From the NCBI GenBank assembly GCA_965637545.1, contig OZ281494.1, forward strand, positions 26,536,001 through 26,600,000: DNA of 64,000 bases, read 5' to 3'. Below are positions 3,901 to 56,021 of this stretch, piece after piece. The stretch comes from Phallusia mammillata (Eukaryota). The translations under genes and the position numbers were made by a program. Below the pieces are notes generated by a model that was not told where the DNA came from, ran no database searches, and worked only from the letters and a program-made list of their open reading frames with translations. The stretch's first letter is position 1. Each line of letters starts with the position of its first letter.

Positions 3901-6328
3901 ATGATTTGTTTGCTGCTAACGCTGCTGTTGGCAGCGCAAAGTGTATCACAGGATTCTTCATCTACTGGCTGCAAAGGAAGCATAATTAACCAGTATTTTG
4001 GAAGTGACCAGCATTTGATTCAGCATTCAGTTGTTCCATCAGGGCGTGAGGCACCAGGACCACCCGGAAAAAGAGGACCTATTGGCCACATGGGAACAAT
4101 TGGCCCTAAGGTAAAAACGAACAATTTATTAAATTGTTTTTGTTTTTGTGGTTGTAGATTTAACCACGGTGTTTTTAAAAAAATAATGTTTTAAAGTAAT
4201 TAAAAATCAGGAAATTTTCGTTCAAAATTATGAAACTTATTGTGCCCGTTAGTGTTTTATAACAGAAATAAAATAAACGTTTTTTTTTGCTCAACCAGCA
4301 GTAATACAACTCGCCGCCTTTTCAATGTCTCATTCGGGCGTCTTTATCTGTTGCTGTGATTGCTAATGGTTTGTGGGAAACGAGTTTTTTAGAGTCGTGA
4401 AACGTTTACGCGCGTGCTAGCACCACGAACGTAAAAAAAAACTGATACCGACTTGCCGCTATCGGTCGCTTTTACACCTCTAACACTAAAGTATTTATCA
4501 CCGTTTTATAACACTGTGTTTGTACCACTTTCCTTCCGCACACTGTGTTACATGATATAAGAAGGGTTGTATAAGGCTTTGTGCCATTTTTTTGATGAAG
4601 ACGCCTCAAATCAAAACTTTGTATGAGTTATATACAGTTGGCCGTTAAGCAAAAGAAAAGTCAAGGAAATGTGCCTGGCGACACCAGTTATGTTTAAGCT
4701 CGCGAGTTTTTCAATTTATTTTAGCGTTTACACAACTTTTGCTGGTTGCTTGGTTTTTATGTTTCCAAATAAAATTTCACTGAAAGATTTAATATACCTT
4801 ACTCGGGAACGGTGTATATTTGGCAGGGCGATCCGGGTGTAAAAGGCCAAAAAGGAGAACCTGTTCTTGCTTCGACAATTCTAGAACTTAAAAGAGCGAT
4901 AAATCGATTGGAAAATTCAGGTATTATGGAACAGATTAACGCTTCTACTTTGGACAAATACAATTGCGTTATTGCGTTTAGTAGCAGTTATATTAATCCT
5001 TAACACAATTGTACTGCGTAGTTCTGTGATGTTAACACTTTTTTTTGTCAGTAAATGCCATTGTACCAGCCACCTGCAAACACGTGGCTTTATCGCCAGG
5101 ATCTTATCCTATCTTACCCCTTGGACTTGATGGAACACCATTCTACGCCTACTGTGAAGGTCAGGTGTTACGCTTTAAAAGTTAAATTTGGATTAAATGG
5201 TATTGTGTTGCAAAACAGAAAGTCCCACTGGCGTGAGAAAGACATTGATTGGTCACGACAGCGAAACTGAAATTGCGGCTGATAATTGTGAAGCTCCCAG
5301 ATGTTACAGAAGAAAAGTAACATACGACGTCAGCATGGAAGACATTGTACGTCTTATTGATGCATCCCAGCAATGCAGACAATTTATTCAGGTATTTCTG
5401 CGAGCCAAAAAATCTGGTATTAAAATGGAAATAAGTAAAACGGAAATAACTTGTGTTCGCTTGCAAATGACACGAACATGAAAAATGGGACCCGAAAAGT
5501 TTTTTTTGCTATTATTTCTGGATACAAATCATTTTGTGTACAATACCTGGCTAACTGGATGCAGCACAAACGAACGCATAATATGTATAGATTATAGAAG
5601 GATTGTGAAAAAACTCTTTTGTTGGGAATAAATATATAGTTTTGTGCAACATGGAGCCTAATAACAGTAGTATGTTGATTTGCTATCAAATTCTTCTTAA
5701 TGTAGAGTCTTATTGTTTCATTCTGCCACCGTTAAAGAGTTTATGACAAATTTTACTGGTGTAAATATATTGCTTTCAGTTTCGATGCAGAGGCTCCCTG
5801 CTGCACCAACGTAAAGATGTTTATGGAGCTTGGTTATCAAGAAACGGAACGTTAAAACTCAACTGGGGTGGAACTAAAAAAGACTACTATTGCGCCTGCG
5901 GAGAGACTGGTATAAACCTCCATTTGTTTTTGGACCTGTAACCAATTATAGTGTTAGCTTACACAAAGATTCAGCAATTTGTGGACTTTTGTGGGCATAC
6001 TGTTATTTACATGACTTTGTCGTGATCGCTGGTCTGCATAGACGCTTTAGGGCTGATCCCAGTTGTAAATTAATGTTCTTCTTGCACTTGGGAGTGTCGA
6101 ACACTGAAAACATAATCATTTAAATAACTAAAGCTTGCAACGTTGACAGGCACTTGCATTGACAATACGCACAAGTGCAACTGCGACCAGAACGGACCAA
6201 TTGATACATCAGATGAAGGTTATCTGACAAACAAAGAAGATTTGCCAGTAACTGAAATGCATTTTGGAGACATGGCAGACAGTTCGGAGTTTGGCTGGCA
6301 TACACTCGGAAAACTTGAATGTTGGTAA
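3901..6328 (+). CDS. Paralogue B: intact 6-exon collagen/coiled-coil/Caspr-type FReD protein (297 aa)
   Basis: Exons 3901-4110, 4827-4920, 5052-5159, 5219-5391, 5780-5909, 6150-6328 (894 nt, open frame, GT-AG). Retains the PATC..FYAYC exon. Confidence 0.9.
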
Positions 6329-7451
6329 AAACAGCTTATATGCCGACGTTAAATGAACGCATCAAGTTTATCATCATCTTATACGCACAGTCAATTTTCA
6401 AACACCGTTTTTATCCTTTTCCTTACATGGCCTATATTCCCCTGTTGTACATTAGTACTGCATTACCCTTTTATTATCCGCATTTTTCTCACACGCACCC
6501 ACGCGTATCTTGTTGGTGGAACCTTAATGCTACTTTGCAAACGGGGATTTATATGATTAAGTGTTGCATTTCATAGTTGTGTTCCGCGGCACTGATACCA
6601 TACCAACCCCTTAACATTTTGTCAGTTTTAAACAATAATATAAACAAAATAAGAATTTGTTTACTGTTGCATTATCGTTTCTGTGTTGTGTATTATTTCA
6701 ATGATTGGACCGTGCATAAGAACTCGCTTTAACTTCAAACGGCATTACACTACATACTGTATATAGATTACAATCCAATGAGTGCTTGCGTGAATACAAC
6801 ATTGTGTCAGAAGTGGGATCAAACCTCAGTCTCCATTCAAGACCTATTTATTAAGTTTAACATAAACTTTAACTCAAGGAATTTCACTGAATCCACAATT
6901 CGAATCTTTAACAGATTTCAGTAAAAAATGCCACCAACCGTTACGTGAAGTTACAGGATGTAATTCAAATTTGCAGCAATGGCATTTAGAGTTAAAATTT
7001 GGAAACATGCCTATTGCCTCCATTCGTCGACTAAGTTTTGAAAACTTGAATGTACAGTGCATGCCGCTGGGCTGCTTTGTAGGTTTGCTGAAAAAAATTG
7101 CAGTGTTGCTAAAAACAGGTTTTGCAACCCTTTTGATGAACTCTATTTTAGGTCTAAAATGCAAACAAATGGATAAAATTCTGCTTGTAAGTACTTTTTA
7201 TCCTGGGGTTGTAAGTAGGACCGAAGCCGAAATACACTGTTCAATTACAAAGTATTTCAAGTTTTCAAGACTGGTCGTTCGACATTTTTAGTCAGACGTC
7301 AATGTAAATTGTAAACTCGATCAGTAGAGTTTAACCAGGTAGTTGATGTGCAGCAACAGTGGGGCCTTGCAGGATTACTGCAAACAATAACTTTTTCCGC
7401 AGTTTGAACTATCCGTACACGTAACAGATCAGTTTATAATTTATTGATGAA

Positions 7452-9630
7452 ATGGAGAAAATCATATGTTTGCTGCTAACGCTGCTGTTGTTAACTCAAT
7501 GTGCATCACAAGACTCTTCGTCCACCGGTTGTAAGGGAAGCACAATCATTCAGTATTTCGGGAGTGATCAGCATTTGACTCAACATCAGTTGCGTCCAGT
7601 TGGTCCGTCAGGTCGTGGAGCACCTGGGCCACCCGGAAAAAGAGGACCAGTTGGCCAAATGGGACCAGTCGGTTTGAAGGTTAATAAACAAAAAATAAAA
7701 ATAATACACAACACTCTTTTTAAAGATGTTATGTTAAAGATTATTTTGTGTTAATTTCACTGCAGTCACATTTTTTACTGTTTTTGTTAGGGGGATACGG
7801 GCAGCAAGGGTCAAAAAGGAGAACCTGCTCTTTCTGCGACAATCCTTGAATTGAAAAGAGCAGTTCACGAACTAGAAAATTCAGGTATTGTTAAGATTTG
7901 CAACAGGTAAGCAGTTTTAATGTATCAGCTCCAACATAGCTGCAATTTGCAGCAGAATATAAATGTCGGCTCGGAATATCTCAACTAATTTTAGATTCGG
8001 GCTTAATCGAAATTCTGCATCGAAAAATCTGCTGCCTAATCAGAATGATGGTTTTTCATTTTATTTAATTTTGTGTATGTTTTTCAGTCATGAGAATGAC
8101 ATCGATTGGCCACGACAGCGAATCTGAAATTGAAGTGAACAAATGTGAGCCTAACAGATGTTACCAAAGAACAGTAACATACAACACCAGCATGGATAAT
8201 ATAGTTCGTCTTATTAGTGCATCCCATCACTGCAGACAATTTATTAAGGTAATTGTTAAATACTTTTGTTCATTTTCATGAGGCAAATAATGATTTGTTT
8301 AAGGTTTTGCTTAATATAGAACTGTTGGATATAAAAGTTTCGTTTTTTCCTACCAAAACTATCACAAGTTTTAAACAAGTTTTACTTTAGTACCGATGTC
8401 GAGGTTCTGTGCTATTCCACAATGGAAATGATTATGCAGCTTGGGTGTCCAGGAATGGAATGCTGAAACACAACTGGGGAGGAAGTGAAAGAGAATACTA
8501 CTGCACCTGTGGAGAAACTGGTCGGGCTGCTGTTGTTTGTTTTTGGGCGTATGGGAAGCAAGTTTGAAATAGTGATGTACCGAATATTAGGTTTACCTAA
8601 TTTATTCGACCGGGCATTTTTTAAGTCAGGCATTTTTACAAAGATTCGATTTCGGGAAAGTAGGGTGTATAGCGTTACAAACGAAACTGATTTTTTTACG
8701 AACACAGTTTTAAAGCGTAAAAGGTTCCTTTCCTTGTCTACTTTAATGGACACCACACAATCTTTTAAACTTAACAATAACTTAGCGTCAACAATTACTA
8801 TGTTCAAACCATTGTTGTTTTGTACAGCCAGACAAAAAAATCAACTGTTCGTTCACAAGCTAGCAACGACAGACGAGGCAGCCACAAAACCGACGTTACT
8901 AGGATGCTAATGAAATCCAAATATTATACTAGAAAAACTTTTCGGGAAGCACATTGCTACGTGTGACGTCCTTAATGATGCGGTTGATTCGGCCGAATTG
9001 ATTTGCTTTTGGATCGAATCTAATTTAGCGAGTATAAAACTCATATGTTAAACTCAGTGGTTCTCAAAGTATGGGTCGCGACCCACACATGGGTCGCACA
9101 GGGCAAAAAAATGGGTCGCGCACACAATAGCCTTCCCACTATACTGTTTCGCACATGGCAATTGTAACGTCCTACCACGGGAAATAGGATAAGCTAATCT
9201 TGCGTTAACTGAACTTGGCCATGTGAAAGTTAGCGTTAGAGTATGAGTAAGTATTCGTACAAGGAAATAAAATGCAATGTTTGTTGTTTGAGGCTTGGGT
9301 CGTCAGGTGTTTATAAAACTCAGATTTGGGTCGCGCTCAAAAAAGTTTGAGAACCACTGTGTTAAAGCGTGCTATAGCTCGCTTTTTTAGCACTAAAAAA
9401 CGTTTGTTTCGTAATATGGAGAATAAACATATCCTTTGTTTTGCTTAGGTACATGCATCGACAACGATCACAAATGCAACTGTGATCAGAACTCAGATAC
9501 TGTAACTACATCGGACGAAGGATACCTAACAAACAAAGGTGATCTACCTGTAACTGAAATGCATTTTGGAGACAATGGGGGCGATCTGGAACGTGGTTGG
9601 CACACCCTGGGAAAACTTGAATGCTGGTGA
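7452..9630 (+). CDS. Paralogue C: intact 5-exon form (264 aa), lacks the PxxC..YC exon
   Basis: Exons 7452-7679, 7791-7884, 8088-8248, 8391-8520, 9449-9630 (795 nt, open frame). Confidence 0.9.
9055..9359. mobile_element. hAT (Buster/Charlie-like) MITE in last intron of C
   Basis: Ends CAGTGGTTCTCAAA / TTTGAGAACCACTG. Flanks tgttaaac(t) and tgttaaag are a near-match 8-bp TSD. Confidence 0.75.
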
Positions 9631-12312: not shown

Positions 12313-14449
12313 ATGATCTTTGCGTTGATAATGCTTTTGTTAATAAGTCAAAGTGCATCCCATGACTCTTCAGCCACCGGTTGCAAGGGAAGCACAATTA
12401 ACCAGTATTTTGGAAGTGACCAGCATTTGTTTCAGCATTCAGTTGGACCATCAGGGCGTGGAGCACCTGGGCCACCCGGAAAAAGAGGACCTGTTGGCCA
12501 TATCGGATTAATCGGTCCTAAGGTAAAAACAAAAATTATTAAAAAAATCCACAACGATCCACGAAATAACTGTGGATTAGGCTGTGTTCTATTATACGGA
12601 ACGACTAGGGCTTGTTCTGCAAAGATTTCATTGGCCCTCAAGGGTTATTCCTGACTACCCTTGTACACTTGAATGTTGTGTTTCTTTAAACCGGTAGTTG
12701 ATTTTCATGCTTGACAGGGTGATGGGGGCAACAAAGGTCAAAAAGGCGAACCAGCTCCTGATTCAACCATCATGGAATTGAAACAAGCCCTTAACCGTTT
12801 GGAAAATTCAAGTAGTTTTTTAATGCATTAATTTATCTATTTCAAATACAGAGACACTCATAAACGTTGCCGTGCAAACCAAAACAAGCTTTAGAAATAA
12901 TTTTTATCTTGTTTTTTTTACATCTCACTTTCTAACTTCAATAATTTTTATATTAGATTCGTAACCATCGTGAACCACGTGTTTTAAGAATCGTGGGAGA
13001 AAATTCATTTTTCCGTTTACAAACTAATAACTAAGCACTAAATCAGTGGTTCTTAAAATGGGTGATACTGTCCGCCTCTGGACGTTTGTGATAATGAATA
13101 GGGCTCTGGACGTAATTAAGGTGCTGCAATAAATCTTGGCAGACAAAACATGTGAAATTACATGTAAAAAGTTAAAACTTTAAATACTCATTTTGTACAT
13201 TTTTCAGTTACGTTGATTGGCCACGACAGCGAACATGAAATTACAGTTAATAAATGTGAACCTGATAGATGTTACAGAAGGACAGTTACATACACCACCA
13301 GCATGGAAAACATTATTCGTCTCATTAATGCATCACAACACTGCAGACAATTTATCCAGGTATTTGTCAATTACTTTTGTTAATTTTAAAGATGAACATA
13401 TATTCATAACTTGGATCAGCCCTGAAGCGTCTATAAGCAGACCAGCGATCACGGCACACTCATATGTAAATCACAGTACGCTAGGCCTATTGAAGGCGCC
13501 ATCCCGAATCAGCCGGTCACCAAGCATTCACCACTATATGGCAGGGCATAGGCTAGAACAATCTAGCCTGCGGTGGGATTCTAACCCAGGACAGAAGTCT
13601 AGGCTATGGCAAGGCATCTAGCCTAGACTCCTCCCACCACAGGCTAGATTTTTCTAGCCTATGTCTTGCCATTTGGTGGTGAATGCTTGGTGACCGGCTA
13701 GTGCGGTATGGCGCCTTCAATGGGCCTAGCGTACTGTGATTTTGATTTTACAGAAGCAATTACTTCTTGATTTAGGTTATGCTGAATATAGAAATGTTGT
13801 GTAGGCCTATATATGTAGGCCTATATATATCCCTTTTTTTCTATCAATAAATAAACAGTGTACAATGGCCAAAGGAAAGTATTATTATTAATGCATAGTT
13901 GACTGACCAAATATGTTTTATTTCAGTACCGATGTCGAGGTTCTATGCTATTCAAAAATGGAAATGATTTCGCAGGTTGGGTGTCCAGAAATGGAGTGAT
14001 AAAACACAACTGGGGCGGAAGTGAAACAGAATACTATTGCGCCTGTGGAAAAACTGGTCAGTTCCTTATTGTATATTTTTAGACTTGTGAGCAGCTACTA
14101 GTTTGTATCTTAGGCAGTTCTGTGTAGTTTGAATTATTTTAAACACTTGATTGTGGCTAAGCATGTGAATGTTCGCGTCATTTGTAAAGCGTTTGGGACT
14201 GTTAAAAAAGTTTGCTTATTGTAATGTTTACCTATTGCAGAGAATTCAAAAATCTTTTTTTTTTCAGGTACATGCATTGACAATGATTACAAATGCAACT
14301 GCGATCAGAACTCAGATACTGTGAGTACATCAGACGAAGGATACCTAACAAACAAAGATGATCTACCAGTAACTGAAATGCATTTCGGAGACACTGGAGG
14401 CGATCCGGAACGTGGTAGGCACACCCTGGGAAAACTTGAATGCTGGTGA
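12313..14449 (+). CDS. Paralogue D: intact 5-exon form (255 aa)
   Basis: Exons 12313-12522, 12718-12811, 13208-13359, 13927-14056, 14268-14449 (768 nt, open frame). The otherwise invariant GWHTLG is GRHTLG here. Confidence 0.88.
13472..13738. mobile_element. Fold-back MITE with CAC..GTG ends (EnSpm/CACTA-like) in intron of D
   Basis: Almost wholly palindromic: cacagtacgctaggcctattgaaggcgccat ... atggcgccttcaatgggcctagcgtactgtg, flanked by AT on both sides. Confidence 0.65.
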
Positions 14450-16935: not shown

Positions 16936-19900
16936 ATGATCTGTGTGTTGCTAATGCTGGTGTTGATAGCTCAAAGTGTATCCCAGGACTCACTATCCAC
17001 TGGTTGCAAGGGAAGCATAATTAATCAGTATTTTGGAAGTGATCAGCATTCGGTTGGTCTATCAGGTCGTGGAGCCCCTGGACCACCCGGCAAAAGAGGC
17101 CCTGTTGGCCACATTGGGCAAATTGGCCTTAAGGTAAATTAAAATTCAACTTAAGAGTGTGTGAACTTTTTTGATTTGGGAGTAAAATGCGCAGTGAGAA
17201 GTTTTACAAATAAGTGTCTGCAAAACGCAACAATATGAATTTCGCATACACTTTTTCACAAAACTGGCATTTTTTTACAAACGGGGGTGCAGTGCCACTT
17301 AGAGTTGACTCTGCTGTGATTTTGCTTGACTTTGGGTTGTAATCAACAAACTTGAGTATGCAGATCCAACAAACGCAGCAACAACTATGTGATGGCAGGT
17401 GTACCACATTTTGCATAACATTTGGCCTTAACAAGTTGGTTTGAATGATGCAAAACTTTGTGCTTACTATAAGAGACAAGGGCACATAAAGGGATTAGCT
17501 ACTGATCATGCTTACATTTTGAGAAAGCGCTTATAAACGCCGGAATACAGGCATCTCTTAAAATGCTAAACAACCATTCGCACTACAGCAAAGATTAAAC
17601 GATGTTTTATTAAAAACAATAATTTGCTTGGCAGGGTGATACGGGCAGGAAAGGTCAAAAAGGAGATCCAGCTATTTCTTCAACTATTCTGGAATTGAAA
17701 AGAGCCGTGGATCGATTAGAAAACTCAAGTAACGTCTAAATGCACAGTTAATCAAGCTGTTTTGCAGAACATCAGTGTTCTTAAACACTGCCACGTAAAG
17801 TTAACAAACTTGAAAATATGTTTTGTTTAGTTTAAATCAGTTTTGTAGTTGTGTTTTTTTGTGAATTACTAGGCATCATATTCTAAATAATCCCGACCTT
17901 GACACAATTTGAAAAGCTGGTTATATTTAAAACTTTATTTTTTACGAGCAACCAATCGATGTTGTTTTGTTTCACAATAACTTGATCCATTTTCTAGTTA
18001 CCTCCATTGGCCACGACAGCGAACATGAAATTGAAGCAGGTAACTGTGAACCAGCCAGATGTTACAAAAGGGCGATAATATACACCACCGGCATGGAGAA
18101 TATTATTCGCCTTATTGATGCATCACAACACTGCAGACAATACATCAAGGTATTTAGTAAAATAATTTTAGGCCAACCTTTTATGTAAACCCACTTGCAA
18201 TTGTGGCTATAGGTTAATTATGTTTGGTTTAGTACAGGGGCGGGCAACATACGGCCCGCGGGCCGGATCCGGCCCGCGACGGGATTTTGAGCGGCCCGCA
18301 GACACTTTCTGGTCTTACATGAGTACTTGCTTACTACGTCAAATTATAGTTGTAACAGACAGTAACGCTCCCCAATAGCAAAAAACTTTCCCGCCTTTGT
18401 TACCATTGCACCATACATCTATTGTTACGACATAACCGCCAACCTTGTGTGTGGCCTGCTTTCACGGCTTCCTTTGTTTCCACACATGTAGCCTAGTTAG
18501 TGTTTCAGCAATATCTAAGTCTGTGGTGTATGCATTCAATTTGCTGTGGTAAATAATTTTATGTTGTATCAGTTAGATTGTTTGGACTGTATTGTAATTG
18601 TGACGTTCTTGATTGTATTTGGTTTAGGACGTTTAAGTGGTCAAAAATCCGCTTTAAATCACTGGATAAATACGCGATTAATGTACCGACTCGGGTATCC
18701 GGCCCGCCAAGTACTTCATTTTCCCATATCAGGCCCGCCGACTGGAGAAGTTGCCCGCCCCTGGTTTAGTATCATTGGCTACATGCGTTTCGTCCTGTTG
18801 TCCAAATGTGGTTTATGACGGAACATATAAATTAATCTTACATGTTTAACCATAAAACGCTTTGCCTGTATGTAAAAATTACTAGGAAATAGTAGAAAAA
18901 GTGCTTTTTAGGAAAGGAAAGAATCCACTATTTTTTAATAATATAAGCTATTTTGATATCGATACAATTCCACAGAATTAAATATCTTATTAATAAGTTT
19001 TAATTCCTGCACGGTTGAACGATCAATAGTATCGAAATATTGCCTATTTTGATCAAAAATGTTTTATTTTGTTTACAATATGTGCAACTCAATGATGTCG
19101 CGTAAGCAATACCCACAAACTATTGTATCAAACCAACCACTGACAAATCGCTAAAGATAGAAAAAAACATATCCTGAATTTAGCCACATTGTTTTTTGCA
19201 AATATTTTTGTTTATAGTACCGGTGCCGAGGCTCCTTACTATTTAGGCCTGCAGATATTCGTGCAGCTTGGGTGTCTAGAAACGGAACTCTGAAATACAA
19301 CTGGGGTGGAAGTGAAAGAAACTACTATTGTGCTTGTGGAGAAACTGGTGAGTCTGAGACAATCATTTAGGCTCCTTCTTTGTGCCGGTCCGCGAGGAGT
19401 TCGTTATACTTTTTCAGGTTAAACGCTTTGAAACATGTTCCCCATGCATCCTGTGGATGATAAACTAATTTAAGCGTTTTTATTGCTAAATATTTGCAGT
19501 TTTTCGAAGGCCGGTCCGCGATAAAATTTCAGGTTCAAAACCGGTCCGCAGTGTAAAAAAGGTTGCCGACCCCTGTGTTAGGTAACGAAGATTTTAACCA
19601 TTTTTTACTTTCACGCCGGCTTGTTTGCTTGTGATAAACCTGTATGTCGAAATGTTTACATTGCAGTGAATACCACATCTCGGATACAACTATTTGTCTC
19701 CAGAATACTCAGCGAATCATTTTGGATCTGGCCCTATTTAATTTCATAATTGTGGTGATTAAATTTCTATTTTTTTTTAATGTAGGAACATGCATTGACA
19801 ATAGTCACAAATGTAACTGCGACCAGAACTCAAATGATAAAACAACATCGGATGAAGGATATCTGACAAATAAAGATGATCTACCAGTAACCGCAATCCA

Positions 19901-19967
19901 ATTTGGAGACCTTGGGGACAGTGGAGAGTATGGTTGGCACACTTTGGGGAAACTTGAATGTTGGTAA
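16936..19967 (+). CDS. Paralogue E: intact 5-exon form (251 aa)
   Basis: Exons 16936-17133, 17635-17728, 17998-18149, 19218-19347, 19786-19967 (756 nt, open frame). Confidence 0.9.
18235..18763. mobile_element. hAT (Charlie-like) MITE in intron of E
   Basis: TIR CAGGGGCGGGCAAC / GTTGCCCGCCCCTG, subterminal GGCCCGC repeats, perfect TSD gtttagta. Confidence 0.9.
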
Positions 19968-24125: not shown

Positions 24126-24786
24126 CTAATAACAAACAGGTATTGTTACGCGTGTATACACACTGCAAAACGAAACAGTAACCTTGTACGTTAACCTGCC
24201 CGCCGCCAGTTTACCTCTTTAAGTTTCATGGTATAGACGCGGTTGTAGCTAACTACTAGAAACTTCGTTGGAACATTAATTTCATGGTATATCTATATTT
24301 ATTTCTTAAATTCCTGACTTTTGAGTACATTTTAACATTTCTCCCTGACGCAGATTTAAACACTAAATTCCCTGACATGTCAGGGAAAATCCTGACGTAT
24401 GGCAACCCTATTCTATACACTAACATTTACGGTTTACCTTAAATACCGCCAAACATTTTCATGCAGTGAATTACAGTAAACGTTTGCTAAAATGCATGGT
24501 AAGTCGACTGTAATTGCCATTCGTGAAAAACCTTTTGTCAGTTCGGTTTTAATATTGCACTGTAAGTTATTTCACAGCGTTTTTTGTAGGTAAAAAGCAA
24601 TGATACTGTTTCTAAGGGCAGCCTAATTTTGCGACTGGTAAAACAAACTAGAAATACACATTCATCTTACAGCTCTGTTAAAAAATTAATCTAAAAAAAA
24701 CAACTGTAAAAATGATTTGCCTGTTGCTAACGCTGGCGTTGATAACCCAAAGTGTATCCCAAGACACTTCATCAACTGGTTGCAAG

Positions 24787-25253
24787 TAGTGATGTACCGA
24801 ATCGGCAAAATTTCGATTCGGCCGAAACCGAATATTCGGCGGTTTTGCCGAATAAATTCGGCCGAATCAACCGAATCATTTATGACGTCACGCGAAGTCG
24901 TACCCTACGCGTTTGACATGAAAAACATAAGTTTATCTACCAGGCAATTAGTGCAGAATGGTTGTGTTTCGTCCTTATTTTAGTTCTGTGGAGTTTAACA
25001 TTGCCTCAAGCATGTTGCCAACCCGACAATGAAATACTATTTTTTGTCTGCACTAGGAAAAGCGTCAATGTGTTAAAAAGTATAAAGATTAACGCGATTT
25101 TCGTTGACAATAAGCAGAAAAGACGCATTTAACGCTTTAAAAGATTCGGTTTCGGCCGAATCACAACAAATTATTCGGCCGAAACCGAATCTTTGCAAAA
25201 GTGGCCGATTCGGCCGAATATATTCGGCAAACCGAATATTCGGTGCATTTCTA
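24787..25253. mobile_element. hAT (Ac-like) MITE inserted in coding exon 1 of F
   Basis: Ends TAGTGATGTACCGAAT / ATTCGGTGCATTTCTA, perfect 8-bp TSD gttgcaag. Removing it with one TSD copy restores TGCKGSTINQYF. Confidence 0.92.
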
Positions 25254-26473
25254 GTTGCAAGGGAAGCACAATTAATCAGTATTTCGAAAGTGATCATTCG
25301 TTGATTCAAGACCAGTTGCGTCCAGTTGGTCCATCAGGTCGTGGAGCGCCTGGGGCACCCGGAAAAAGAGGACCAGTTGGCCAGATGGGTCCAATCGCCC
25401 CTAAGGTAAATTAAAACATACTTTATGAAATACTCAGTAAAGATTTGTTGATTTTTTAGAAAAGATGTTCAGGCATATTTTATTCATACTAACCCCTTTT
25501 CTGATTTGTGCTAAAGAACAACGATTTGTTAACTTTGTTCATTTCATCACCAATAATAGTAAAGAAGATTACGAACAAAAATTGAAAGTAGATTTAAATA
25601 AACTTGTAACGCCTAACTGTGTGCTCGCAGGTGTAATACATTTTTCATAACATATGGCCATAACAATATAGTTGGTTCGATGCAAAGCTTGCTGGAAAAG
25701 CACCTGAGATTTAGATATTAGGTGGTATCTCGTTTAAAATAGAGTACAAAACTATTAATGTTAGCACTAATAAAGTTTTAGCTATAACCATTCGTACTGT
25801 ATTAAACAATATGAGGCATTTTATTAAAAATCAGTAATTTGGTTTGTTTGCTTGGCAGGGTGATACAGGCAGCAATGGTAAAAAGGAGATCCTGCCCCTT
25901 CTTCGACGATTCTGGAATTGAAAAGAGTCTTGGACCGATTAGAAAACTCAAGCATTTACGATGTTTTACACAGAAGCAATGCTCACAAACACTGCCACAC
26001 AAACAATAAACTTAAAGTATAATTTGTTTAGTTTAAGTTAGTTTGGTAACTGTGTTTTGTGATTTTGTTGATTCACGAAACATCATGTTCTAAATTATTC
26101 CGAAAACTTATCCCGACCTCAACCCAACACAAATAAGTTTGATTTACAGCTTTGTTTTTTACGAGCCTTTAATCGTTTGGATGTTGTCTTATTTCACAAA
26201 ACCTTTACCCGTTTTCTAGTTACGTCAATTGGCCACGACAGCGAATATGAAATTGAAGCAGGTAACTGCGATCCACCCAGATGTTACAAAAGAGTAGTAA
26301 CATACACCACCAGCATGAAAAACATTGTGCGTGTTATTAATGCATCAAAACACTGCAGACAATTCATCAAGGTATTTGTAACATAATATGTATGCTTACC
26401 ATTTTGCAAATCCACGTACAATTTGTGGCTGGTTTAAGCTTGAGTAAAGTTTTGCTTTGTTTTATGTTGTAAG

Positions 26474-45290: not shown

Positions 45291-46542
45291 ATGATTTGTC
45301 TGATGCTTACACTGCTGCTTATAAGTCAAAGTGTATCTCAAGACTTGTCATCAACTGGTTGCAAGGGAAGTACAATTATTCAGTATTTCGGGAGTGATCA
45401 GCAATTGACTCAACATCAGTTGCATCCAGTTAGTCCATCAGGTCGCGGAGCACCTGGAGCACCCGGAAAAAGAGGACCCGCTGGCCAAGTGGGACTAATT
45501 GGTCCAAAGATAAATACTTTTTAGGGAGAAAGCTGTACAGTGTTTGTTATTGTTTTTACGGAACCTTTGCAACGGCAGCGTTGTCTTTTAGTTAAAAACA
45601 CGAATCTTGTAAGTTTAAGTAACGGTAGCCTATATTTAAGATAATATTGTAACGCAAGTGGCATTTTGCTTTTATTGTGACTTGGACACGAGTCCATATT
45701 TTTAATTAGAGTTTAGAAACACATTTTGCGAAGTACAATTATTTCTAATCAGAATATTTAGCCTTGTTCGTTTTCTTGATTTAGATGTACCTTTATGGTG
45801 ATTTTGTGGGATTAAAAACGACAGGGTTTGTTCATAGTACGTTTTAGCACATACTTAACCACCGTCACTGTATGAAAAGGATAAAAATCATGTTTAGAGA
45901 ATGCCAACCTTTCACTTCATGACGGTGACAAAGGTTAATTGTAGCTCGTGTGTAAAGGCGTGATTAGAACTGAATACGGACCTTAAATTGGAAACCTGGT
46001 CCGACTAAGCACTTTAATTGCTAACAACGCCACAAATTTGTACGTAGCGTGTCAAACTACACACTGCAAAATGTTATTGGAAGCATGCGTGTCTTGTAGA
46101 TACTCTAATGGCTGACGTTTCCACTTCCAAAACATTTCAAGCTTTGAAAAAAGTATTTTTGTATGTGGTTTTGATTTGAAACCATTGATTAATTATGAGA
46201 TACATTCACAAACGTATACAAAATTTTGCCACCGACAATAAAGTTTTTATCATATTTTTGAATAGGGTGAACTAGGCAGCAAGGGCCAAAAAGGAGAACC
46301 TGCGTCTGTTTCTACAATCAGGGAATTAAAAAAGACAATTTCCCGTTTGGAACGCTCTGGTATTTAGGATTGCTAGCATTTTGCTGTTTTGTGTATCAGT
46401 TACAGGCCCACAAAGTTTAATTTTTTGTCTTGTTTAGTAAATGCTGTGTCCACCAATTGCAATGAAGCTGCATTGTCGTCAGGATATTATCTTATTTCAC
46501 CTCTGGGGCTTCAGGGAATCCACTTCTACGTTTACTGCAAGG
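45291..46542 (+). pseudogene. Paralogue H: 3'-truncated pseudogene (exons 1-3 only)
   Basis: Exons 45291-45509 (donor GT mutated to AT: ccaaag|ataaat, stop four codons later), 46266-46359, 46438-46542. Homology to I ends near 46682 (gtaagctaacttcc). Confidence 0.85.
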
Positions 46543-47728
46543 GTAAAAACATCAAAAAAAGTTAAAAAAATATTAAATACCTTCAAATAAACCGGAAATA
46601 AACCCAGCTAAATATTTAAAAATTTGCGTGAACTATTGTGTCACTGGTTGATACCACTTTAATGCAGGTAAGCTAACTTCCTAACTGAGCTACAAAAGCT
46701 TATTGGTGAACCCGCCGAAAGTCGAATGACATGAGCTTTTAACGAATGGCGTAAACGGCAATTAAGTTTTAATCAAGTAATTGATAAACATTTTTTTTCT
46801 GAAGTTTTTAAAAATCTACTTTCCATTCATGTTTTATCTGCTGTCGGTTTAACAAAATCATAGATTTATGAGCCAGCTGTGATTTCCAGCCGCCTTTCTC
46901 TTTTTAACACAAATTCACTGTTGTGCACTTAAACCAGGGGTGGGCAAACTTTTCAGTGCAAGGGCCGCATTCAAAAGTTCTTAATCTTATCGGGCCGCAT
47001 AGTATTTCACCAACGGCCGCCAATTGCTTGCTTGTTTTTGTTTTAAAATAACTGGTGCAAAGAATTTGATTTGCATCATATATTTATACCATTTAAAGCC
47101 ACCTAAAATGCTCAGATTAATAATTTCTAACTTGGTGCATAAGTTTAGCTAAACGATGCTCACTGTTTATGATGTCATAATGTGTATTGTGACGATTGCG
47201 GTGCCTGTTTTTTCGCATTGTTTGCGCACAATAAGCGGATGAAAAGCCTGACGCATATAGTTACTAGGCACAAACTTGTCTCCGAGGCCGCAGGTTGTGC
47301 ACGCCTGATCTAGCTCAAAATATTGACATAGCATATTTTCAGCTATGTGCAAATAAGTTTGTTGTCACTTGATTGGACAAACATGGGTTGAAATTGAAAC
47401 GCTACATTTGTAATTGTTTCAAACTAAACTAGCATTTAAACAACCACGTTTTTGGTTAATAAATTCCTTGCGCCAACATTAAACAAGGCGAGCCGCTTTT
47501 AGCATCCATCTTTAGGTCTTGTGCGGGTCTGTGTTAACGATTCTGAAGCCGTTTTTTTTGTCCGTTTGCAACTGCAACGACCTAAACTTGATCCAAAGTG
47601 ACCAAAGTTTTGGCGTCAAAAGTGCAAATTCGGCTGTATTTGAAAACGTGAATCGCTTTTACTTTTATCGAACGAAGAAAAAAAGACCCTGACAAAAAAG
47701 GGTACTGATTTTATTTAAAGGATAAATC

Positions 47729-47914
47729 AGGGGTTCTTAAACAGGGCTGCACGCACCCCCAAGGGATGCGAGAACTGTTCCTAGGGAGTGCGGGGGTGCT
47801 ACATCATCAAAGTTGGTTAGGTCTATTCTATATAAATACAAAAACCCAGGGGGTGCGAAAATTGGTTGGTTATTTGAAATGAGTGCAGCAAGGAAAAAAG
47901 GTTAAGAACCACTG
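47729..47914. mobile_element. hAT MITE upstream of J (second copy ~57097-57283)
   Basis: Ends CAGGGGTTCTTAA / TTAAGAACCACTG. TSD gtataaac is perfect in the second copy and diverged (ggataaat) on the left of this one. Confidence 0.75.
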
Positions 47915-51300: not shown

Positions 51301-53053
51301 AAAAGATGCCTAAAATCTAACGTTGTATGCCGTTGCTCGTTTACCAGCCGTAACATTGCATTGTTTGAATTTTGCAGATAAAGACGAATGTGAAGGTAAT
51401 CCATGCATGCATGGCGGCACTTGTGTGAACGGACTAGAGGAGCATTTTTGCCTGTGCAGGCCACTTTATACAGGAAAAAAATGCGAAATAGGTGTGTTAA
51501 ACAAATCGTGTTGGTAAAACTGGCGTACGATTGTAAAATTGCAAAACATTTGGTGCCTTTTTAGGTTAAAACTATGTGATAAATAATTCTAAACCGTACG
51601 CATTCATTTAGGTGGCAATATATTCAAATTAAACTAAAATTAACTTAATCACTAGCTTAAACCCAAGTCGAAATAACCTTTTCGCTAACTTATCATAAAA
51701 GTTATGGTTCTAAGCGAATCAAAACGAATATCAGTTGCGATCATCTCCCATCTCAGGCCCTAATGATTTGAATCCATAATAAGACGGAATGAACAAAAAG
51801 TTTAATTATTGTAATACTATGATCCCTGCCAAAAAAATTTTTTTTTGTGTAACATATTTTTAAGCAGTTAGAATGACGTCGATTGGGCACGACAGCGAAT
51901 ATGAAATTGAGGCAGGTAACTGCGAACCAGCAAGATGTTACAAAAGAATCGTAACATACAACACCAGCATGGAAAACATTGTTCGTCTTATTAGTTCATC
52001 TCAACACTGCAGACAATTCATGAAGGTATTAAGTAAAATAATTTATATGCCCTCTCACAATATATATGCCTGCATGCGTTTCATGCTACGGTTGGAATGA
52101 CATCTTGAGGTGACATATAGCTAAACATATCAATTATTCTTTCAGGTTAAACCTTAAAACGCCTACCAGCAAGCAAAACTTGCAAGGAAATGGCAGAAAA
52201 AAACACTGCTATCTTTTTACTAATATTGTCATTTTGATACTGAGACAATTTCAAATAATTAAAAACCTACAATTAAGTTTTGATTCTGGCATGATTGGAA
52301 GATTAATGGCACCCTAATATTACGTAATTGGATACCCAGCACTTTTCAAAAGTTTCAAGGGTGAAAAAAGGTTTGTTTTATTTTGTTCAAAATGTGTGCA
52401 AAACCAATTTAACGATGTCTTATAAGCAAAAAGTCACAAGCTATGTATAAAACGGGCAAAAGGTGTAAAAAACGCCCCAAAAACTTTCACGAACATTTTT
52501 GTTTATAGTACCGGTGCCGAGGTTCCGTTCTATTCTGGAATGGAGATTTTTATGCTGCTTGGGTGTCTAGAAACGGAACCCTGAAATACAACTGGGGTGG
52601 AAGTGAAAGAAACTACTATTGTGCGTGTGGAGAAACTGGTGAGTCCGAGTCAACTATTTAGGCCTGCAGAAAATCACTTTCGTTATATATTGTGCTTTTC
52701 CCGCGTTTTTTCATTCTTCACATCCGTCTTTTGCTTGCACTAAAGCATGCTGACTACCTTGCAGTGATAAACACACGTCGAATCAATTTTTAACCCACTT
52801 AAACATTCCAATTTCGTTCTAGTGCCTAGTTTTTGTTTTTGTACTGATTAAATTTATATTTTTCTTTAATGTAGGAACATGCATCGACAATAGTTACAAA
52901 TGTAACTGCGACCAGAATTCAAAGTATATAACTACATCGGATGAAGGATACCTGACAAACAAAGATGATCTACCAGTAACTGAAATGCATTTTGGAGACC
53001 TTAGCACTGGCGAGTATGGTTGGCACTCTCTGGGAAAACTTGAATGCTGGTGA
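48324..53053 (+). CDS. Gene J1: chimeric secreted protein signal-LCCL-LCCL-EGF-Caspr-type FReD (397 aa)
   Basis: Exons 48324-48384 (MSWTFFLAFLICMRTSHG), 48620-48775 + 49336-49461 (LCCL1: TC..CPDNC..GDRVY..VCLAA / GGPVVV..YSGGNRNAV), 49887-50036 + 50627-50746 (LCCL2: CPAAC..VYGSVMYSVKSSVCRAAIHAGKI / GGFV..FIGSLSNGIVS), 51378-51491 (EGF DECEGNPCMHGGTCVN..CLCRPLYTGKKCE), 51868-52025, 52509-52638, 52875-53053. 1194 nt, open frame, all GT-AG. Confidence 0.88.
51057..51275. mobile_element. hAT MITE in intron of J1 (second copy ~60421-60639)
   Basis: CAGTGGTTCTCAAAC / GTTTGAGAACCACTG, perfect TSD tttaagag. Confidence 0.88.
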
Positions 53054-53816: not shown

Positions 53817-56021
53817 ATGATTTGTCTGCCGCTTACACTACTGTTGATAAGTGAAAGAAAATCTCAAGACTCGTCATCCACTGGTTGCAAGGGAAGTACA
53901 ATTATTCAGTATTTTGGGAGTGATTAGCATTTGACTCAACATCAGTTGCATCCAGTTGGTCCGTCAGGTCGTGGAGCACCTGGGTCACCCGGAAAAAGAG
54001 GACCTGTTGGCCAAGTGGGACCAATCGGTCCAAAGGTGCATACTTTTTAGGAAGAAAATCTGTACGGTGTGTTTGTTATTGTTTTTACGGAACCTTTGCA
54101 AGTGCAGCGTTGTCCTTTAGTTAAAAAATGAATCATGTGAGTTTAAGTAACGATATTTAGGATAATATAGTAACGCAAGTTGCATTTTGCCCATACCGTG
54201 ACTTGACACTAGTCCAAGTTTTTAATAAGAGTTTAAAGACACATTTTGATAGGCTCTGATTAGCTAACAATTTGTACGTGTAGTATGCTAAACTACACAC
54301 TTAAAGTGATAATAGTAGCATGCTTTGTAGATACTCTAATGGCTGACGTTTCCACTTCCAAAACGTTGTTTTTCAAGCTTTGAAAAAAGTATTTAAAACT
54401 GCGGCTTTGATTTGAAACCATTGATGCTGGGATACATTCAAGAATGTATGCAAAATGTTGCTACCCGCAATAAAGTTTTCATCTTATGTTTCAATAGGGC
54501 GAACCAGGCAGCAAAGGCCAAAAGGGAGAACCTGCGTCTGTTTCTACAATCAGGGAATTAAGAAACACAATTTCCCGCTTGGAACGCTCTGGTATTTTAT
54601 GATTGCTGGCATTTTTCTGTTTTGTGTATATCAGTTTTTCCACAAAGTTTAATTTTTTGCTTGTTTAGTAAATGCTGCGCCCACCAATTGCAATGAAGCT
54701 GCAGTGTCGTCAGGATATTATCTTATTTCACCTCTGGGGCTTCAGGGAATCCCCTTCTACGTTTACTGCAAAGGTAAAAAATTTAGTTGTTAAATACCTT
54801 CAAATGAACCGGAAATAAACCAAGCTACTTAATTGCGTATATTATTACGTTACTGATTTGTATCACTTTAATGCAAGTAAGCTAACTTCCTTCGTTTCAA
54901 TAATCGTCACACTTAATTTACTTAGCTGGTTCTAGCGTTTCATCTGTGAAACGAGCATCGATTGGCCACGACAGTGAATCTGAAATTGCGACACAAAAAT
55001 GCGAACCACATAGATGTTACAGAAGGACAGTAACATACGACATAAGCATGGAAAATATTGTTCGCCTCTCAACACTGCAGACAATATATTAAGGTAACTG
55101 GTAAATAAGTAAATTCAGTAAGGCCGGCCCTTATATGGATGGCATAACACCAAATCAAGCTGATCTCCCAAGCATTTTCATATAGCAAGTGCGGTGGCAC
55201 TCTAACCCACGACAAGAGCCTTTTCGGGGATCGCGTTTTACCAACTGAGCCACGCAGGCTCATTGGCGAGCCCACCGAAAGTCCAATCACATGCGCGTTA
55301 AACGAATGACGTAAACAGCAATCAGGTATTAATCAAGTAATGTTTAACAAATCGTAGGTTTTTTGAGCCGGCTTTGATTTCCTGGCGTCTTTCTTCTTAA
55401 TCGCCACAAACACACTGTTATCCATCGTTAAACCATCCAATGGCTTAACATTTTGCATGTTAATCCGATTACTACGTTGATGGTTCATAATATCTACGTT
55501 AAGTTTTCAAAAATTGAAACCAGTTAATCTGTTTAGTATCGGTGTAAAGGATCTCATCTATGCAATACCAAACATGTTTACGCAGCCTGGGTGTCAAGAA
55601 ACGGAATACTGAAATACAACTGGGGTGGAAGTGAGAGAGACAGCTATTGCGCGTGTGGGGAAACCGGTAAGTCTATGGTCTATTTCTTTCATTGAATTTA
55701 AATGTATTTTTTGTCGAGTTGACACACAGTATATATGTCACCCACAATTCCTCTGCACCTTAACAAAATAAACACGTTTTTAATTTCGGATTTGTTTTTA
55801 CTAATTGCTTTGAACAAAATCATTCTTTATTTGATCAAGGAACGTGCATCGACAATAACTACAAATGTAACTGTGATAAAAATTCAAATGATATAACTAC
55901 TTCGGATGAAGGATACCTGACAAACAAAGATGATCTACCAGTAACTGAAATGCATTTCGGAGACACTGGGGGCAGTGGCGAGCGTGGTTGGCACACTCTG
56001 GGAAAACTTGAATGCTGGTGA
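53817..56021 (+). pseudogene. Paralogue I: 6-exon form, pseudogene
   Basis: Exons 53817-54035 (TAG at 53925, codon 37, CAG in paralogues), 54498-54591, 54669-54773, 54926-55093 (11-nt deletion frameshift near 55068), 55537-55666, 55840-56021. Confidence 0.88.

What the first reader, a model, noticed from the sequence alone, without database searches (positions are those of the whole stretch)
5780..56021. Three hypervariable loops in an otherwise conserved head domain
Seen, loop after CRGS: A VLHWKQDEPRG, B LLHQRKDVYG, C VLFHNGNDYA, D MLFKNGNDFA, E LLFRPADIRA, F MLFQSSVRFA, G FLFRNGNIFA, J VLFWNGDFYA, I HLCNTKHVYA. Loop after CD.N: SESYVT, GPIDT, SDTVTT, SNDKTT, SGSITT, SKYITT. Loop after FGD: AGDPAEF, MADSSEF, NGGDLER, TGGDPER, LGDSGEY, LDGGEY, LSTGEY, TGGSGER. 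The framework around them (WVSRNG, NWGGS, SDEGYLTNK, HTLGKLECW) is almost invariant. Inference: a diversifying ligand-binding surface, as in immune recognition repertoires.
Basis: partly seen in the sequence, partly recalled or inferred. Interest (0 to 1): 0.72.

Follow-up and report, generated by a model that had tools for sequence, protein, structure and literature searches.

The report
Collagen-stalked gene family with variable loops
A sea-squirt chromosome carries about 28 tandem copies of a gene for a secreted protein with a short collagen stalk and a head folded like the collagen C-propeptide. Three loops of that head differ strongly between copies, but only two loop positions show statistical signs of selection for change, so an immune-type recognition role is plausible and not shown.

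Summary
The three loops have three times the column entropy of the rest of the head (permutation p = 5e-5).

The head is not a typical fibrinogen domain. A model of the closest full-length homologue (Ciona) matches fibrillar procollagen C-propeptide trimers at Z 15.6, against Z 6-7 for ficolins and fibrinogen. The protein is a mini-procollagen: signal peptide, about 10 Gly-X-Y triplets carrying P-G-K-R-G-P, a coiled-coil neck, then the head. Copy g1 is transcribed and spliced exactly as modelled.

Framework dN/dS is 0.1-0.2. The loops as a whole run at about 1 (pN/pS 1.33, not significantly above 1), with no rise in synonymous rate. My own M1a/M2a and M7/M8 tests favour a small positive class (p = 0.002-0.015), but the signal sits in two loop-1 codons. 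Loops 2 and 3 and exon 4 look neutral or constrained.

A predicted homotrimer places the loops outside the chain interface. One shared face is inferred, not shown. An immune role is untested. I found no paper describing this family.

The parts
Exons are 3901-4110 (signal peptide, N-terminal Cys, Gly-X-Y), 4827-4920 (Gly-X-Y plus coiled-coil neck), 5052-5159 (base subdomain), and 5219-5391, 5780-5909 and 6150-6328 (petal).
   Evidence: The ORF has GT..AG at all five introns. A 1319-base contig of run X1 joins the exons at exactly these sites with 0 mismatches, with partial support in X2, X7 and X4.
5798..5827 (+). Loop 1 of g1: the 10 codons after CRGS. The equivalent stretch in g2 is 8409-8438. 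The two codons with posterior above 0.95 for omega > 1 are the 1st and 4th of this loop (g2: 8409-8411 and 8418-8420).
   Evidence: Highest entropy window of the head. Site posteriors from M2a and M8.
6194..6208 (+). Loop 2 of g1, after CNCDQN. It is 5-6 residues long and varies in length between copies.
   Evidence: One site reached posterior above 0.95 under M8 on the single-tree analysis, but the exon-6 test is not significant.
6272..6292 (+). Loop 3 of g1, after FGD. It is 6-7 residues long and varies in length between copies.
   Evidence: pN/pS is 0.85 and no site exceeds omega 1.
Exon 6 has an apparent 1-base frameshift in an A9 run.
7452..9630 (+). g2 (C): intact 5-exon ORF of 264 aa that lacks exon 3 (the base subdomain).
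   Evidence: No RNA contigs in four runs.
12313..14449 (+). g3 (D): intact 5-exon ORF of 255 aa without exon 3.
16936..19967 (+). g4 (E): intact 5-exon ORF of 251 aa without exon 3.
24712..28008 (+). g5 (F): pseudogene. Exon 1 is split by an insertion, and exon 6 is frameshifted after 'DDLP'.
29512..31718 (+). g6 (G): intact 5-exon ORF of 260 aa without exon 3.
45291..46556 (+). Stalk and base exons (e1-e3) of a copy with no head exons directly downstream.
51864..53053 (+). Duplicated at 61227-62416.
53817..56021 (+). g8 (I): pseudogene with an in-frame stop in exon 1 and the 3' end of exon 4 replaced. The duplicate, g10, starts at 63179.
61227..62416 (+). Second copy of head J, inside the 99.25% segmental duplication 47675-54641 = 57043-64000.

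Best explanation
The window covers the start of a 240-kb tandem array in a sea-squirt genome, with about 28 copies (G000 C1 26.536-26.778 Mb).

Each gene encodes a small secreted 'mini-procollagen':
- a signal peptide;
- one N-terminal cysteine;
- about 10 Gly-X-Y triplets containing P-G-K-R-G-P;
- a coiled-coil neck;
- a roughly 190-residue head with the fold of the fibrillar-procollagen C-propeptide (a base subdomain plus a 'petal').

Three chains most likely assemble through the neck, the base and the C-terminus. This would put one petal per chain on the outside.

The three hypervariable stretches are loops that flank beta-strands in the petal (two of them hairpin turns). They lie outside the predicted chain interface and, by strand topology, probably meet at the distal tip of the petal.

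The framework is under strong purifying selection. The loops evolve at about the neutral rate, and two loop-1 positions are under positive selection.

The most likely reading is a family of trivalent binding proteins whose exposed petal tips have diverged between paralogues to give different binding specificities. In layout this resembles collectins and ficolins, but the head is of a different kind.

Shown: gene structure, expression of g1, fold, the rate contrast, and the site-model result.

Inferred: trimer geometry, a shared loop surface, ligand binding, and any immune role.
For: Gene models and array:
- Gene models with canonical splice sites.
- The g1 transcript is joined exactly as modelled.
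- 42 exon-6 matches in the genome, 28 of them in one cluster.

Fold and assembly:
- The AlphaFold model of the 42%-identical Ciona homologue P0009 has head pLDDT above 95.
- It matches procollagen III and I C-propeptides at Foldseek E = 3e-8. VIA Z is 15.6, rmsd 3.3 A, 171 residues, spanning model 101-290, against Z 6-7.4 for fibrinogen and ficolin domains.
- Predicted homotrimer of P0009 76-293: score 0.78, best of 3 controls 0.00. That mark was reached by 21 of 30 proteins solved as pairs of one chain and by 0 of 23 solved as single chains.
- The three runs agree in 100% of their contacts, and partner pLDDT is at least 92.
- The interface residues are 78-102, 107-110, 114, 123-124, 182 and 291-292. 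None lies in loops 196-206, 248-251 or 273-279.

Rates and selection:
- Entropy contrast, p = 5e-5.
- Framework dN/dS 0.06-0.23 against about 1 in the loops.
- pN/pS 1.33 against 0.21, Fisher p = 5e-7, with similar pS.
- M2a vs M1a with all branch lengths optimised: p = 0.0018 for exons 5+6 and 0.015 for the whole head.
- M8 vs M7 p = 0.005, and M8 vs M8a p = 0.0018.
- My M0 likelihood equals IQ-TREE's, -2281.239.

Stalk motif:
- P-G-K-x-G-P is present in 17 of 18 exon-1 copies and in 13 of 26 collagen-bearing homologues.
- It has the register and the lysine of the MASP-binding motif of MBL and ficolins (PMC2856262).
Against: - The loops as a whole are not significantly above neutrality (p = 0.26).
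- The positive-selection signal comes from two codons in exon 5 only.
- The exon-4 tree conflicts with the whole-head tree by 22 lnL units. Gene conversion therefore occurs in the array and can inflate site tests.
- The same loops are variable and indel-prone across distant species (consensus of A2), as expected for loops that are simply unconstrained.
- The structure and trimer are of a Ciona homologue, not of a window protein. The trimer pass may come from the model's memory of solved C-propeptide trimers. On eukaryotes the mark was reached by 17 of 29 such proteins (animals 7 of 16), but by only 1 of the 7 with no older solved relative.
- No coordinates were available, so I could not measure whether the loops form one surface.
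- There are no ligand data, no tissue or challenge expression data, and no population data.
- Xaa in the stalk motif is Arg, not the usual aliphatic residue.
Confidence: 0.5

Rival explanations
1. Neutral drift. The three stretches are surface loops with little structural constraint. After repeated tandem duplication they simply accumulated substitutions and indels at the mutation rate. There is no diversified binding function, and the few 'selected' sites are artefacts of gene conversion and a small sample.
For: - Loop pN/pS is 1.33, not different from 1. Loop 3 is 0.85.
- The exon-6 and exon-4 tests are not significant.
- Length variation occurs in loops 2 and 3.
- The same positions are unconserved across 46 distant homologues.
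- Topological conflict between exons shows recombination.
- Several copies are pseudogenes.
Against: - The exon-5 test on its own tree still gives p = 0.0024 with omega 6.8 at two sites. M8 vs M8a, whose null allows neutral sites, gives p = 0.0018.
- The most recently diverged pairs show loop dN up to about twice dS, at 1.5-2.1.
Confidence: 0.3
2. Chain-selection code. As with the chain recognition sequence of procollagen C-propeptides, the variable residues decide which paralogous chains can trimerise together. This would keep the many co-expressed paralogues from forming mixed trimers, or would program particular mixtures.
For: - The head has the C-propeptide fold. In that family a hypervariable discontinuous sequence in the petal controls chain choice (PMC5353611).
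- Many paralogues with near-identical necks sit in one array.
- Residue 182 of the homologue is in the predicted interface. By motif comparison from my memory of the collagen III sequence, not by a tool alignment, it sits where Arg142 of the short chain recognition sequence sits in procollagen III, a residue listed in the supplementary interface table.
Against: - None of the three loops is in the predicted interface.
Exon 4 shows no omega > 1 class.
- In homotrimeric procollagen I the interface is almost wholly in the base.
Confidence: 0.08
3. Structural matrix protein family. The proteins are short-chain collagens of the tunic or another matrix, and the head serves only as a trimerisation and registration domain, as the C-propeptide does. 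Loop variation would then be irrelevant to function.
For: - C-propeptide fold and predicted trimer.
- The related domain occurs next to matrix-type modules (Xlink, CUB, Kunitz) in other proteins.
Against: - Ten triplets are far too few for a fibril-forming helix.
- Four intact paralogues have lost the base subdomain, which makes the head-to-head contacts in the predicted trimer, yet keep the petal under strong purifying selection. This argues that the petal does more than nucleate a trimer.
- The domain also sits beside recognition modules: C-type lectin, SUEL lectin, F5/8 type C, SRCR and C1q.
Confidence: 0.12

Closest known systems
Fibrillar procollagen C-propeptide (COLFI domain, PF01410; structures 4AE2, 5K31, 6FZV)
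   Same: - Coiled-coil stalk, base and petal, with the fold matched over the whole head (Z 15.6, rmsd 3.3 A, 171 residues).
- Predicted trimer through the stalk, base and C-terminus.
- It follows a collagen triple helix.
- The Cys pair of the base looks conserved, and so does a C-terminal 'D-x5-6-E-F/Y-G...G-x-L-E-C' motif. This is by motif comparison with collagen sequences as I recall them, not by a tool alignment.
   Different: - Only about 10 triplets instead of about 340.
- Nothing suggests that the head is cleaved off.
- The base has only two cysteines, so there is no inter-chain Cys47-Cys64 pair, and the stretch where the calcium loop would lie is shorter.
- Pfam scores of the short-stalk members stay below the family cut-off (20-25 bits against 26.2).
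- The petal is undetectable by sequence against solved chains.
- Some paralogues lack the base altogether.
Collectins and ficolins (MBL, L-/M-/H-ficolin): defence collagens of the lectin complement pathway
   Same: Signal peptide, N-terminal Cys, short collagen stalk, neck, trimeric globular head, and multigene expansion in invertebrates. [quoted passage not shown]
   Different: - The head is neither a C-type lectin nor a true fibrinogen-related domain (ficolin heads give Z 6.2-6.5 with about 90 aligned residues).
- Xaa is Arg rather than aliphatic.
- The stalk is shorter.
- No evidence of sugar binding or MASP binding.
The 'fibrinogen-like' region of contactin-associated proteins (CNTNAP/Caspr)
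   Same: Public annotation names the closest relatives 'contactin-associated protein 1-like', 'contactin-associated protein-like 4' and 'EGF and laminin G domain-containing protein-like' (Ciona, Styela). Automatic naming therefore places the head with that region.
   Different: There is no discoidin, laminin-G or EGF module and no membrane anchor. I did not compare it directly with a CNTNAP sequence or structure.
Diversified invertebrate recognition families (snail FREPs, amphioxus and Ciona VCBPs, bivalve C1q-domain proteins); named from my own knowledge, not tested here
   Same: Large lineage-specific tandem arrays of secreted proteins with a conserved scaffold and variable loops.
   Different: I have no evidence here of somatic diversification, of extreme allelic polymorphism or of induction by infection. 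Positive selection is limited to two codons.

Membership tests
COLFI / procollagen C-propeptide fold | Three-dimensional fold of base plus petal shared over the whole domain | tested here: met
   Model of homologue P0009 against 4AE2_C: Z 15.6, rmsd 3.3 A, 171 aligned, model 101-290 to chain 37-245. The next family scores Z 7.4. Foldseek E = 3e-8.
COLFI / procollagen C-propeptide fold | Sequence match to PF01410 above the curated cut-off (26.2 bits) | tested here: not met
   Short-stalk homologues score 20.1 and 25.1 bits or nothing. Single window exons give no hit. Some multidomain relatives pass, at 44.9 and 34 bits.
COLFI / procollagen C-propeptide fold | Trimerises through a coiled-coil stalk and the base | tested here: met
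   Prediction only: score 0.78, best of 3 controls 0.00. The mark was reached by 21 of 30 proteins solved as pairs of one chain and by 0 of 23 solved as single chains. The runs agree in 100% of contacts and pLDDT is at least 92. The pass may come from memory of solved C-propeptide trimers.
COLFI / procollagen C-propeptide fold | Lies at the C-terminus of a long fibril-forming triple helix and is removed by a C-proteinase | tested here: not met
   About 10 Gly-X-Y triplets in g1. Cleavage is not testable here.
COLFI / procollagen C-propeptide fold | Inter-chain disulfide (Cys47-Cys64) and a calcium site in the base | tested here: inconclusive
   Exon 3 encodes only two cysteines. By position these match the intra-chain Cys41-Cys73 pair described in PMC5353611. 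There is no residue-level structural alignment to confirm this.
Collectin/ficolin-type defence collagen | Signal peptide, N-terminal Cys, collagen stalk, neck and trimeric globular head | tested here: met
   g1 model and transcript; neck helix 79-99 in the model; predicted trimer.
Collectin/ficolin-type defence collagen | [quoted passage not shown] | tested here: inconclusive
   P-G-K-R-G-P is present in 17 of 18 copies, and Lys is strongly preferred at this position in homologues (13 of 20). However, Xaa is Arg, Lys, Gln or His. Motif definition from PMC2856262.
Collectin/ficolin-type defence collagen | Head is a C-type lectin or a fibrinogen-related domain with a known sugar or acetyl-group site | tested here: not met
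   There is no Lectin_C hit. A profile of the family matches fibrinogen chains only over the N-terminal subdomain (5e-9, profile positions 51-142). The fold matches ficolins at Z 6.2-6.5.
Collectin/ficolin-type defence collagen | Binds microbial ligands and activates complement | not testable with these tools
   Needs recombinant protein.
Diversifying recognition repertoire | Large tandem multigene family with a conserved scaffold | tested here: met
   42 exon-6 matches, 28 of them in one 240-kb cluster. Framework dN/dS 0.06-0.23.
Diversifying recognition repertoire | dN/dS above 1 at the variable sites | tested here: inconclusive
   Two loop-1 codons have posterior above 0.95. The loops overall give 1.33, p = 0.26. 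Loops 2 and 3 are not significant. Recombination is present.
Diversifying recognition repertoire | Variable residues form one exposed surface | not testable with these tools
   The tools return no coordinates. Indirect evidence: the loops are absent from the predicted interface, and the loop ends of the two long strands are the ends opposite residues 182 and 291-292, which are in the interface.
Diversifying recognition repertoire | High allelic polymorphism or immune-induced expression | not tested

The most novel reading that the evidence does not exclude
Sea squirts, and probably other invertebrate deuterostomes, have turned the collagen C-propeptide fold into the recognition head of a collectin-like defence collagen. 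It carries a MASP-type docking lysine in the stalk and a petal tip diversified by positive selection across about 30 tandem paralogues, including 'base-less' forms made by loss of one symmetric exon. This would be a third kind of head, beside C-type lectin and fibrinogen-related domains, for lectin-pathway-style recognition molecules.
Probability: 0.2. Interest if true: 0.75.

Novelty: new variant of a known kind. Interest (0 to 1): 0.5.

Why it matters
Collagen-stalked trimeric recognition proteins (C1q, collectins, ficolins) are a recurring design of innate immunity, and each known class uses a different head. Here the same design carries a head with the fold of the procollagen C-propeptide, a domain otherwise known as a trimerisation and chain-selection device.

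The domain has no adequate Pfam model. It is filed in databases under misleading names such as 'contactin-associated protein-like', yet a search with the exon-6 profile found 879 cluster representatives.

If the petal tips bind ligands, the family would show how a collagen assembly domain was re-used for recognition. The natural series of paralogues with and without the base subdomain offers a built-in experiment on what the base contributes.

If the loops are merely unconstrained, the array is an ordinary lineage-specific expansion.

Tried and rejected
- **Pfam on single exons:** no meaningful hit for head exons e3-e6; only the unrelated LCCL exon scored.
- **Exon-6 profile against solved-structure sequences:** only a chance cytochrome c match.
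- **Petal of P0009 alone against solved-structure sequences:** nothing. The C-propeptide relation for the petal is therefore visible only by fold.
- **Exon 3 in g2-g6:** searched for between exons 2 and 4 in all frames and not found.
- **Counting substitutions on reconstructed ancestors (SLAC-type):** I did not attempt it by other means and used likelihood site models and independent pairs instead.
- **Joined gene models:** built only inside scripts, for ORF checks, a local BLAST against proteins already fetched, and codon analysis. No database, family or structure tool was given a joined model; those searches went exon by exon by reference. For that reason the structure and trimer are of the Ciona homologue P0009.
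- **RNA evidence for the exon-3-less copy g2:** no contigs in four runs, which is not proof of silence.
- **Literature:** two full-text searches for a description of this family found none. A Styela endostyle paper lists 'contactin-associated protein 4' among expressed genes without analysing it.
- **Chain-recognition reading of the three loops:** considered and ranked low, because the loops are outside the predicted interface.

Full report
**What is in the window.** The sequence is 38% G+C animal DNA with no gaps. Earlier notes on this genome call it a sea squirt. This agrees with the closest named homologues, which are from Ciona and Styela.

Translated searches with the exons of one copy found a repeated gene of six exons:
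- e1: signal peptide, one Cys, and the start of a Gly-X-Y run.
- e2: the end of the Gly-X-Y run and a heptad-like neck.
- e3: 'C...G.Y.I.P...PF.VYC'.
- e4: 'IGHDSE...CRQFIK'.
- e5: 'YRCRGS', loop 1, then 'AWVSRNG..NWGGS..CACGET'.
- e6: 'TCIDN..KCNCDQN', loop 2, 'TSDEGYLTNK.DLPVT.MHFGD', loop 3, then 'GWHTLGKLECW' and the stop.

All introns are GT..AG and their phases are conserved.

The copies in the window are:

| Copy | Position | State |
|---|---|---|
| g0 | minus strand, 591-2840 | apparent 1-base frameshift in exon 6 |
| g1 | 3901-6328 | intact, six exons |
| g2, g3, g4, g6 | see parts | intact, five exons |
| g5 | 24712-28008 | pseudogene |
| stalk-only set | 45291-46556 | e1-e3 with no head exons directly downstream |
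| head J | 51864-53053, again at 61227-62416 | head exons e4-e6 only, downstream of an LCCL exon; duplicated |
| g8, g10 | 53817-56021; from 63179 | pseudogenes |

The duplication 47675-54641 = 57043-64000 is 99.25% identical. Genome-wide, an exon-6 profile finds 42 matches. Twenty-eight of them lie in one cluster at C1 26.536-26.778 Mb, of which this window is the start.

Among 12 distinct lineages of the cluster, the three loops average 1.68 bits of column entropy. The exon-5/6 framework averages 0.43. Random placement of three windows of the same lengths reached the observed sum once in 20001 trials.

There are two qualifications. Exon 4 is moderately variable too (0.76 bits). Four of the nine 'variants' come from broken or duplicated copies.

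**g1 is a real, expressed gene.** Its joined ORF is 297 aa. A 1319-base contig of run X1 covers 3800-6637 and skips exactly the five modelled introns, with no mismatch. Shorter contigs in three other runs from two further studies share four of the five joints between them. These are contigs of runs only guessed to be RNA, but five intron-less GT..AG joints are hard to explain otherwise. No contig lay on g2.

**What the head is.** Single exons gave no Pfam hit. A profile of exon 6 found 879 cluster representatives among 1.84 billion proteins. The closest full-length one is P0009 from Ciona (293 aa). It has the same layout and is 42% identical to g1 over its whole length (local BLAST inside a script).

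Public names for these relatives are 'contactin-associated protein 1-like' and 'EGF and laminin G domain-containing protein-like'. Pfam sees only a sub-threshold COLFI match and a short collagen stretch.

An AlphaFold model of P0009, built with 46 homologues, has head pLDDT above 95. Foldseek puts procollagen III and I C-propeptide trimers first, at E = 3e-8. VIA-align gives Z 15.6, rmsd 3.3 A and 171 residues over model 101-290. Fibrinogen, angiopoietin-like and ficolin heads follow at Z 6-7.4.

By sequence profile, only the N-terminal subdomain matches fibrinogen chains (5e-9), and it also matches the collagen I C-propeptide (2.5e-6). The head is therefore a C-propeptide-type domain, distantly related to fibrinogen-related domains. 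The whole protein is a miniature procollagen.

In other proteins the same head sits beside C-type lectin, SUEL lectin, F5/8 type C, SRCR, CUB, Xlink, C1q and Kunitz modules. It is thus a mobile extracellular module.

**Assembly.** A predicted homotrimer of P0009 residues 76-293 scored 0.78, and the best of 3 controls scored 0.00. That mark was reached by 21 of 30 proteins solved as pairs of one chain and by 0 of 23 solved as single chains. The three runs agree in 100% of their contacts, and the partner's pLDDT is at least 92.

On eukaryotes the mark was reached by 17 of 29 such proteins (animals 7 of 16), but by only 1 of the 7 with no older solved relative. Because C-propeptide trimers are solved, the pass may reflect memory of that likeness.

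The confident interface residues are 78-102 (neck), 107-110, 114 and 123-124 (base, encoded by e3), 182, and 291-292 (C-terminus). The loops of P0009 are at 196-206, 248-251 and 273-279, and none of these is listed.

This pattern matches what is reported for homotrimeric procollagen I, where the contacts are almost all in the base and the C-terminal residue lies near the interface (PMC5353611).

**Do the loops share a face?** No tool returned coordinates, so this is inference only.
- In the model, loop 1 follows the long strand 181-193 and loop 3 precedes the long strand 279-292.
- Residue 182 and residues 291-292 are both in the interface. The two strands therefore probably run antiparallel, with those ends near the trimer axis.
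- That would place loops 1 and 3 together at the far end of the petal.
- Loop 2 opens strand 251-257. The next strand, 267-270, runs straight into loop 3. If those two strands pair as a hairpin, loop 2 lies next to loop 3.

A distal-tip cluster is therefore plausible but unmeasured.

**Selection.** Pairwise Nei-Gojobori estimates give framework dN/dS of 0.06-0.23. Loop dN over whole-head dS is about 1: 0.45-2.1 for pairs with dS below 1, and highest (1.5-2.1) in the most recently diverged pairs.

In four phylogenetically independent pairs:

| Region | Nonsynonymous differences | Synonymous differences | pN/pS | pS |
|---|---|---|---|---|
| Loops | 57.5 | 13.5 | 1.33 (binomial p = 0.26 against 1) | 0.21 |
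| Framework | 76.1 | 90.9 | 0.21 | 0.30 |

The contrast between loops and framework is strong (Fisher p = 5e-7). The synonymous rate is no higher in the loops, so local hypermutation is not the cause.

I wrote a Goldman-Yang codon likelihood with F3x4 frequencies. Its M0 value equals IQ-TREE's, -2281.239. Results on 15 sequences of the core clade:

| Data | Test | Result | p |
|---|---|---|---|
| Whole head | M8 vs M7 | 2dlnL = 10.5 | 0.005 |
| Whole head | M8 vs M8a | 6% of sites at omega 2.4 | 0.0018 |
| Whole head | M2a vs M1a, all branch lengths optimised | 2dlnL = 8.4 | 0.015 |
| Exons 5+6, own tree | M2a vs M1a, all branch lengths optimised | 2dlnL = 12.65; 4.5% of sites at omega 4.8 | 0.0018 |
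| Exon 5, own tree | M2a vs M1a | signal at the 1st and 4th residues after CRGS | 0.0024 |
| Exon 6, own tree | M2a vs M1a | not significant | 0.16 |
| Exon 4, own tree | M2a vs M1a | not significant | 0.91 |

The exon-4 tree fits exon 4 better than the whole-head tree does by 22 lnL units. Exchange between copies therefore happens, which is a known source of false positives. The posteriors are naive empirical Bayes values.

In summary, purifying selection on the scaffold is clear. The loops are near neutral on average, and positive selection is credible only for two loop-1 positions.

**Clues to function.**
- *Stalk motif.* All paralogues with a readable exon 1 except one frameshifted copy carry P-G-K-R-G-P, as do half of the collagen-bearing homologues elsewhere. 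Lys is by far the commonest residue in that slot. [quoted passage not shown] Xaa there is usually aliphatic, whereas here it is Arg (PMC2856262).
- *Base-less copies.* g2, g3, g4 and g6 are intact ORFs that lack exon 3, the base subdomain that carries the head-to-head contacts in the predicted trimer. Exon 3 is phase 1-1, so its loss keeps the frame. Their petals remain under dN/dS of 0.1-0.2. A petal kept under selection without its base suggests that the petal has a function of its own beyond nucleating a trimer.

**Comparison and verdict.**
- The family works most like a collectin or ficolin in layout. It is not a member of either, because the head is of another fold class.
- It shares the fold and probable assembly mode of the procollagen C-propeptide. 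It is not a fibrillar procollagen, because the stalk has only about ten triplets and the Pfam score is below threshold.
- Plain relaxed constraint on surface loops is the main rival.
- A chain-selection code, suggested by the fold, is unlikely for these particular loops.
- I found no paper on this family in the held library.

I rate it a new variant of a known kind, of moderate interest.

Noticed in passing
window 7452-9630, 12313-14449, 16936-19967, 29512-31718: Four intact paralogues (251-264 aa) have lost exon 3, the base subdomain with its Cys pair and the predicted head-to-head trimer contacts. The exon is phase 1-1, so the frame is kept. Their remaining head exons are under dN/dS of 0.1-0.2. 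This gives a natural with-base and without-base series inside one array.
   Followed up: partly
window exon 1 of every copy, e.g. g1 about 4060-4080: The collagen stalk carries P-G-K-R-G-P in 17 of 18 copies. This is the same register and lysine as the MASP-binding motif of MBL and ficolins, but with Arg at Xaa.
   Followed up: partly
window 47675-54641 and 57043-64000: A segmental duplication, 99.25% identical over at least 6.97 kb. It carries an LCCL exon (49853-50170; Pfam LCCL 5.6e-12), the head exons e4-e6 and a g8-type pseudogene. The same unit recurs further along the cluster (loci L008-L011, L017-L018).
   Followed up: partly
window 45291-46556: Exons e1-e3 (stalk and base) of a copy with no head exons directly after them. 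The next head exons lie 5.3 kb downstream, beyond LCCL exons.
   Followed up: no
window 37677-43336 (+): Gag-pol ORFs of an LTR retrotransposon (387, 383 and 502 aa, with protease, reverse transcriptase and integrase-like stretches) in a 47% G+C island, set in a 37% G+C background.
   Followed up: no
window about 760-775 (minus strand): Exon 6 of g0 has an A9 run that leaves 10 instead of 12 bases between the 'D' codon and the 'CNC' cysteine. This is either a true frameshift or a homopolymer error of the assembly.
   Followed up: partly
window 53817-56021; L001, L009, L011, L018: The g8-type pseudogene has a stop in exon 1 ('GSD*HL') and a replaced 3' end of exon 4. It exists in five near-identical copies, so a dead gene is being copied along with its live neighbour.
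   Followed up: partly
L021:3535-4299 (G000 C2 32.011 Mb): In a more distant paralogue on another chromosome, the second half of exon 4 ('DVTYNANMNQI..CRQYIKV') is repeated in tandem about six times in one open frame.
   Followed up: no
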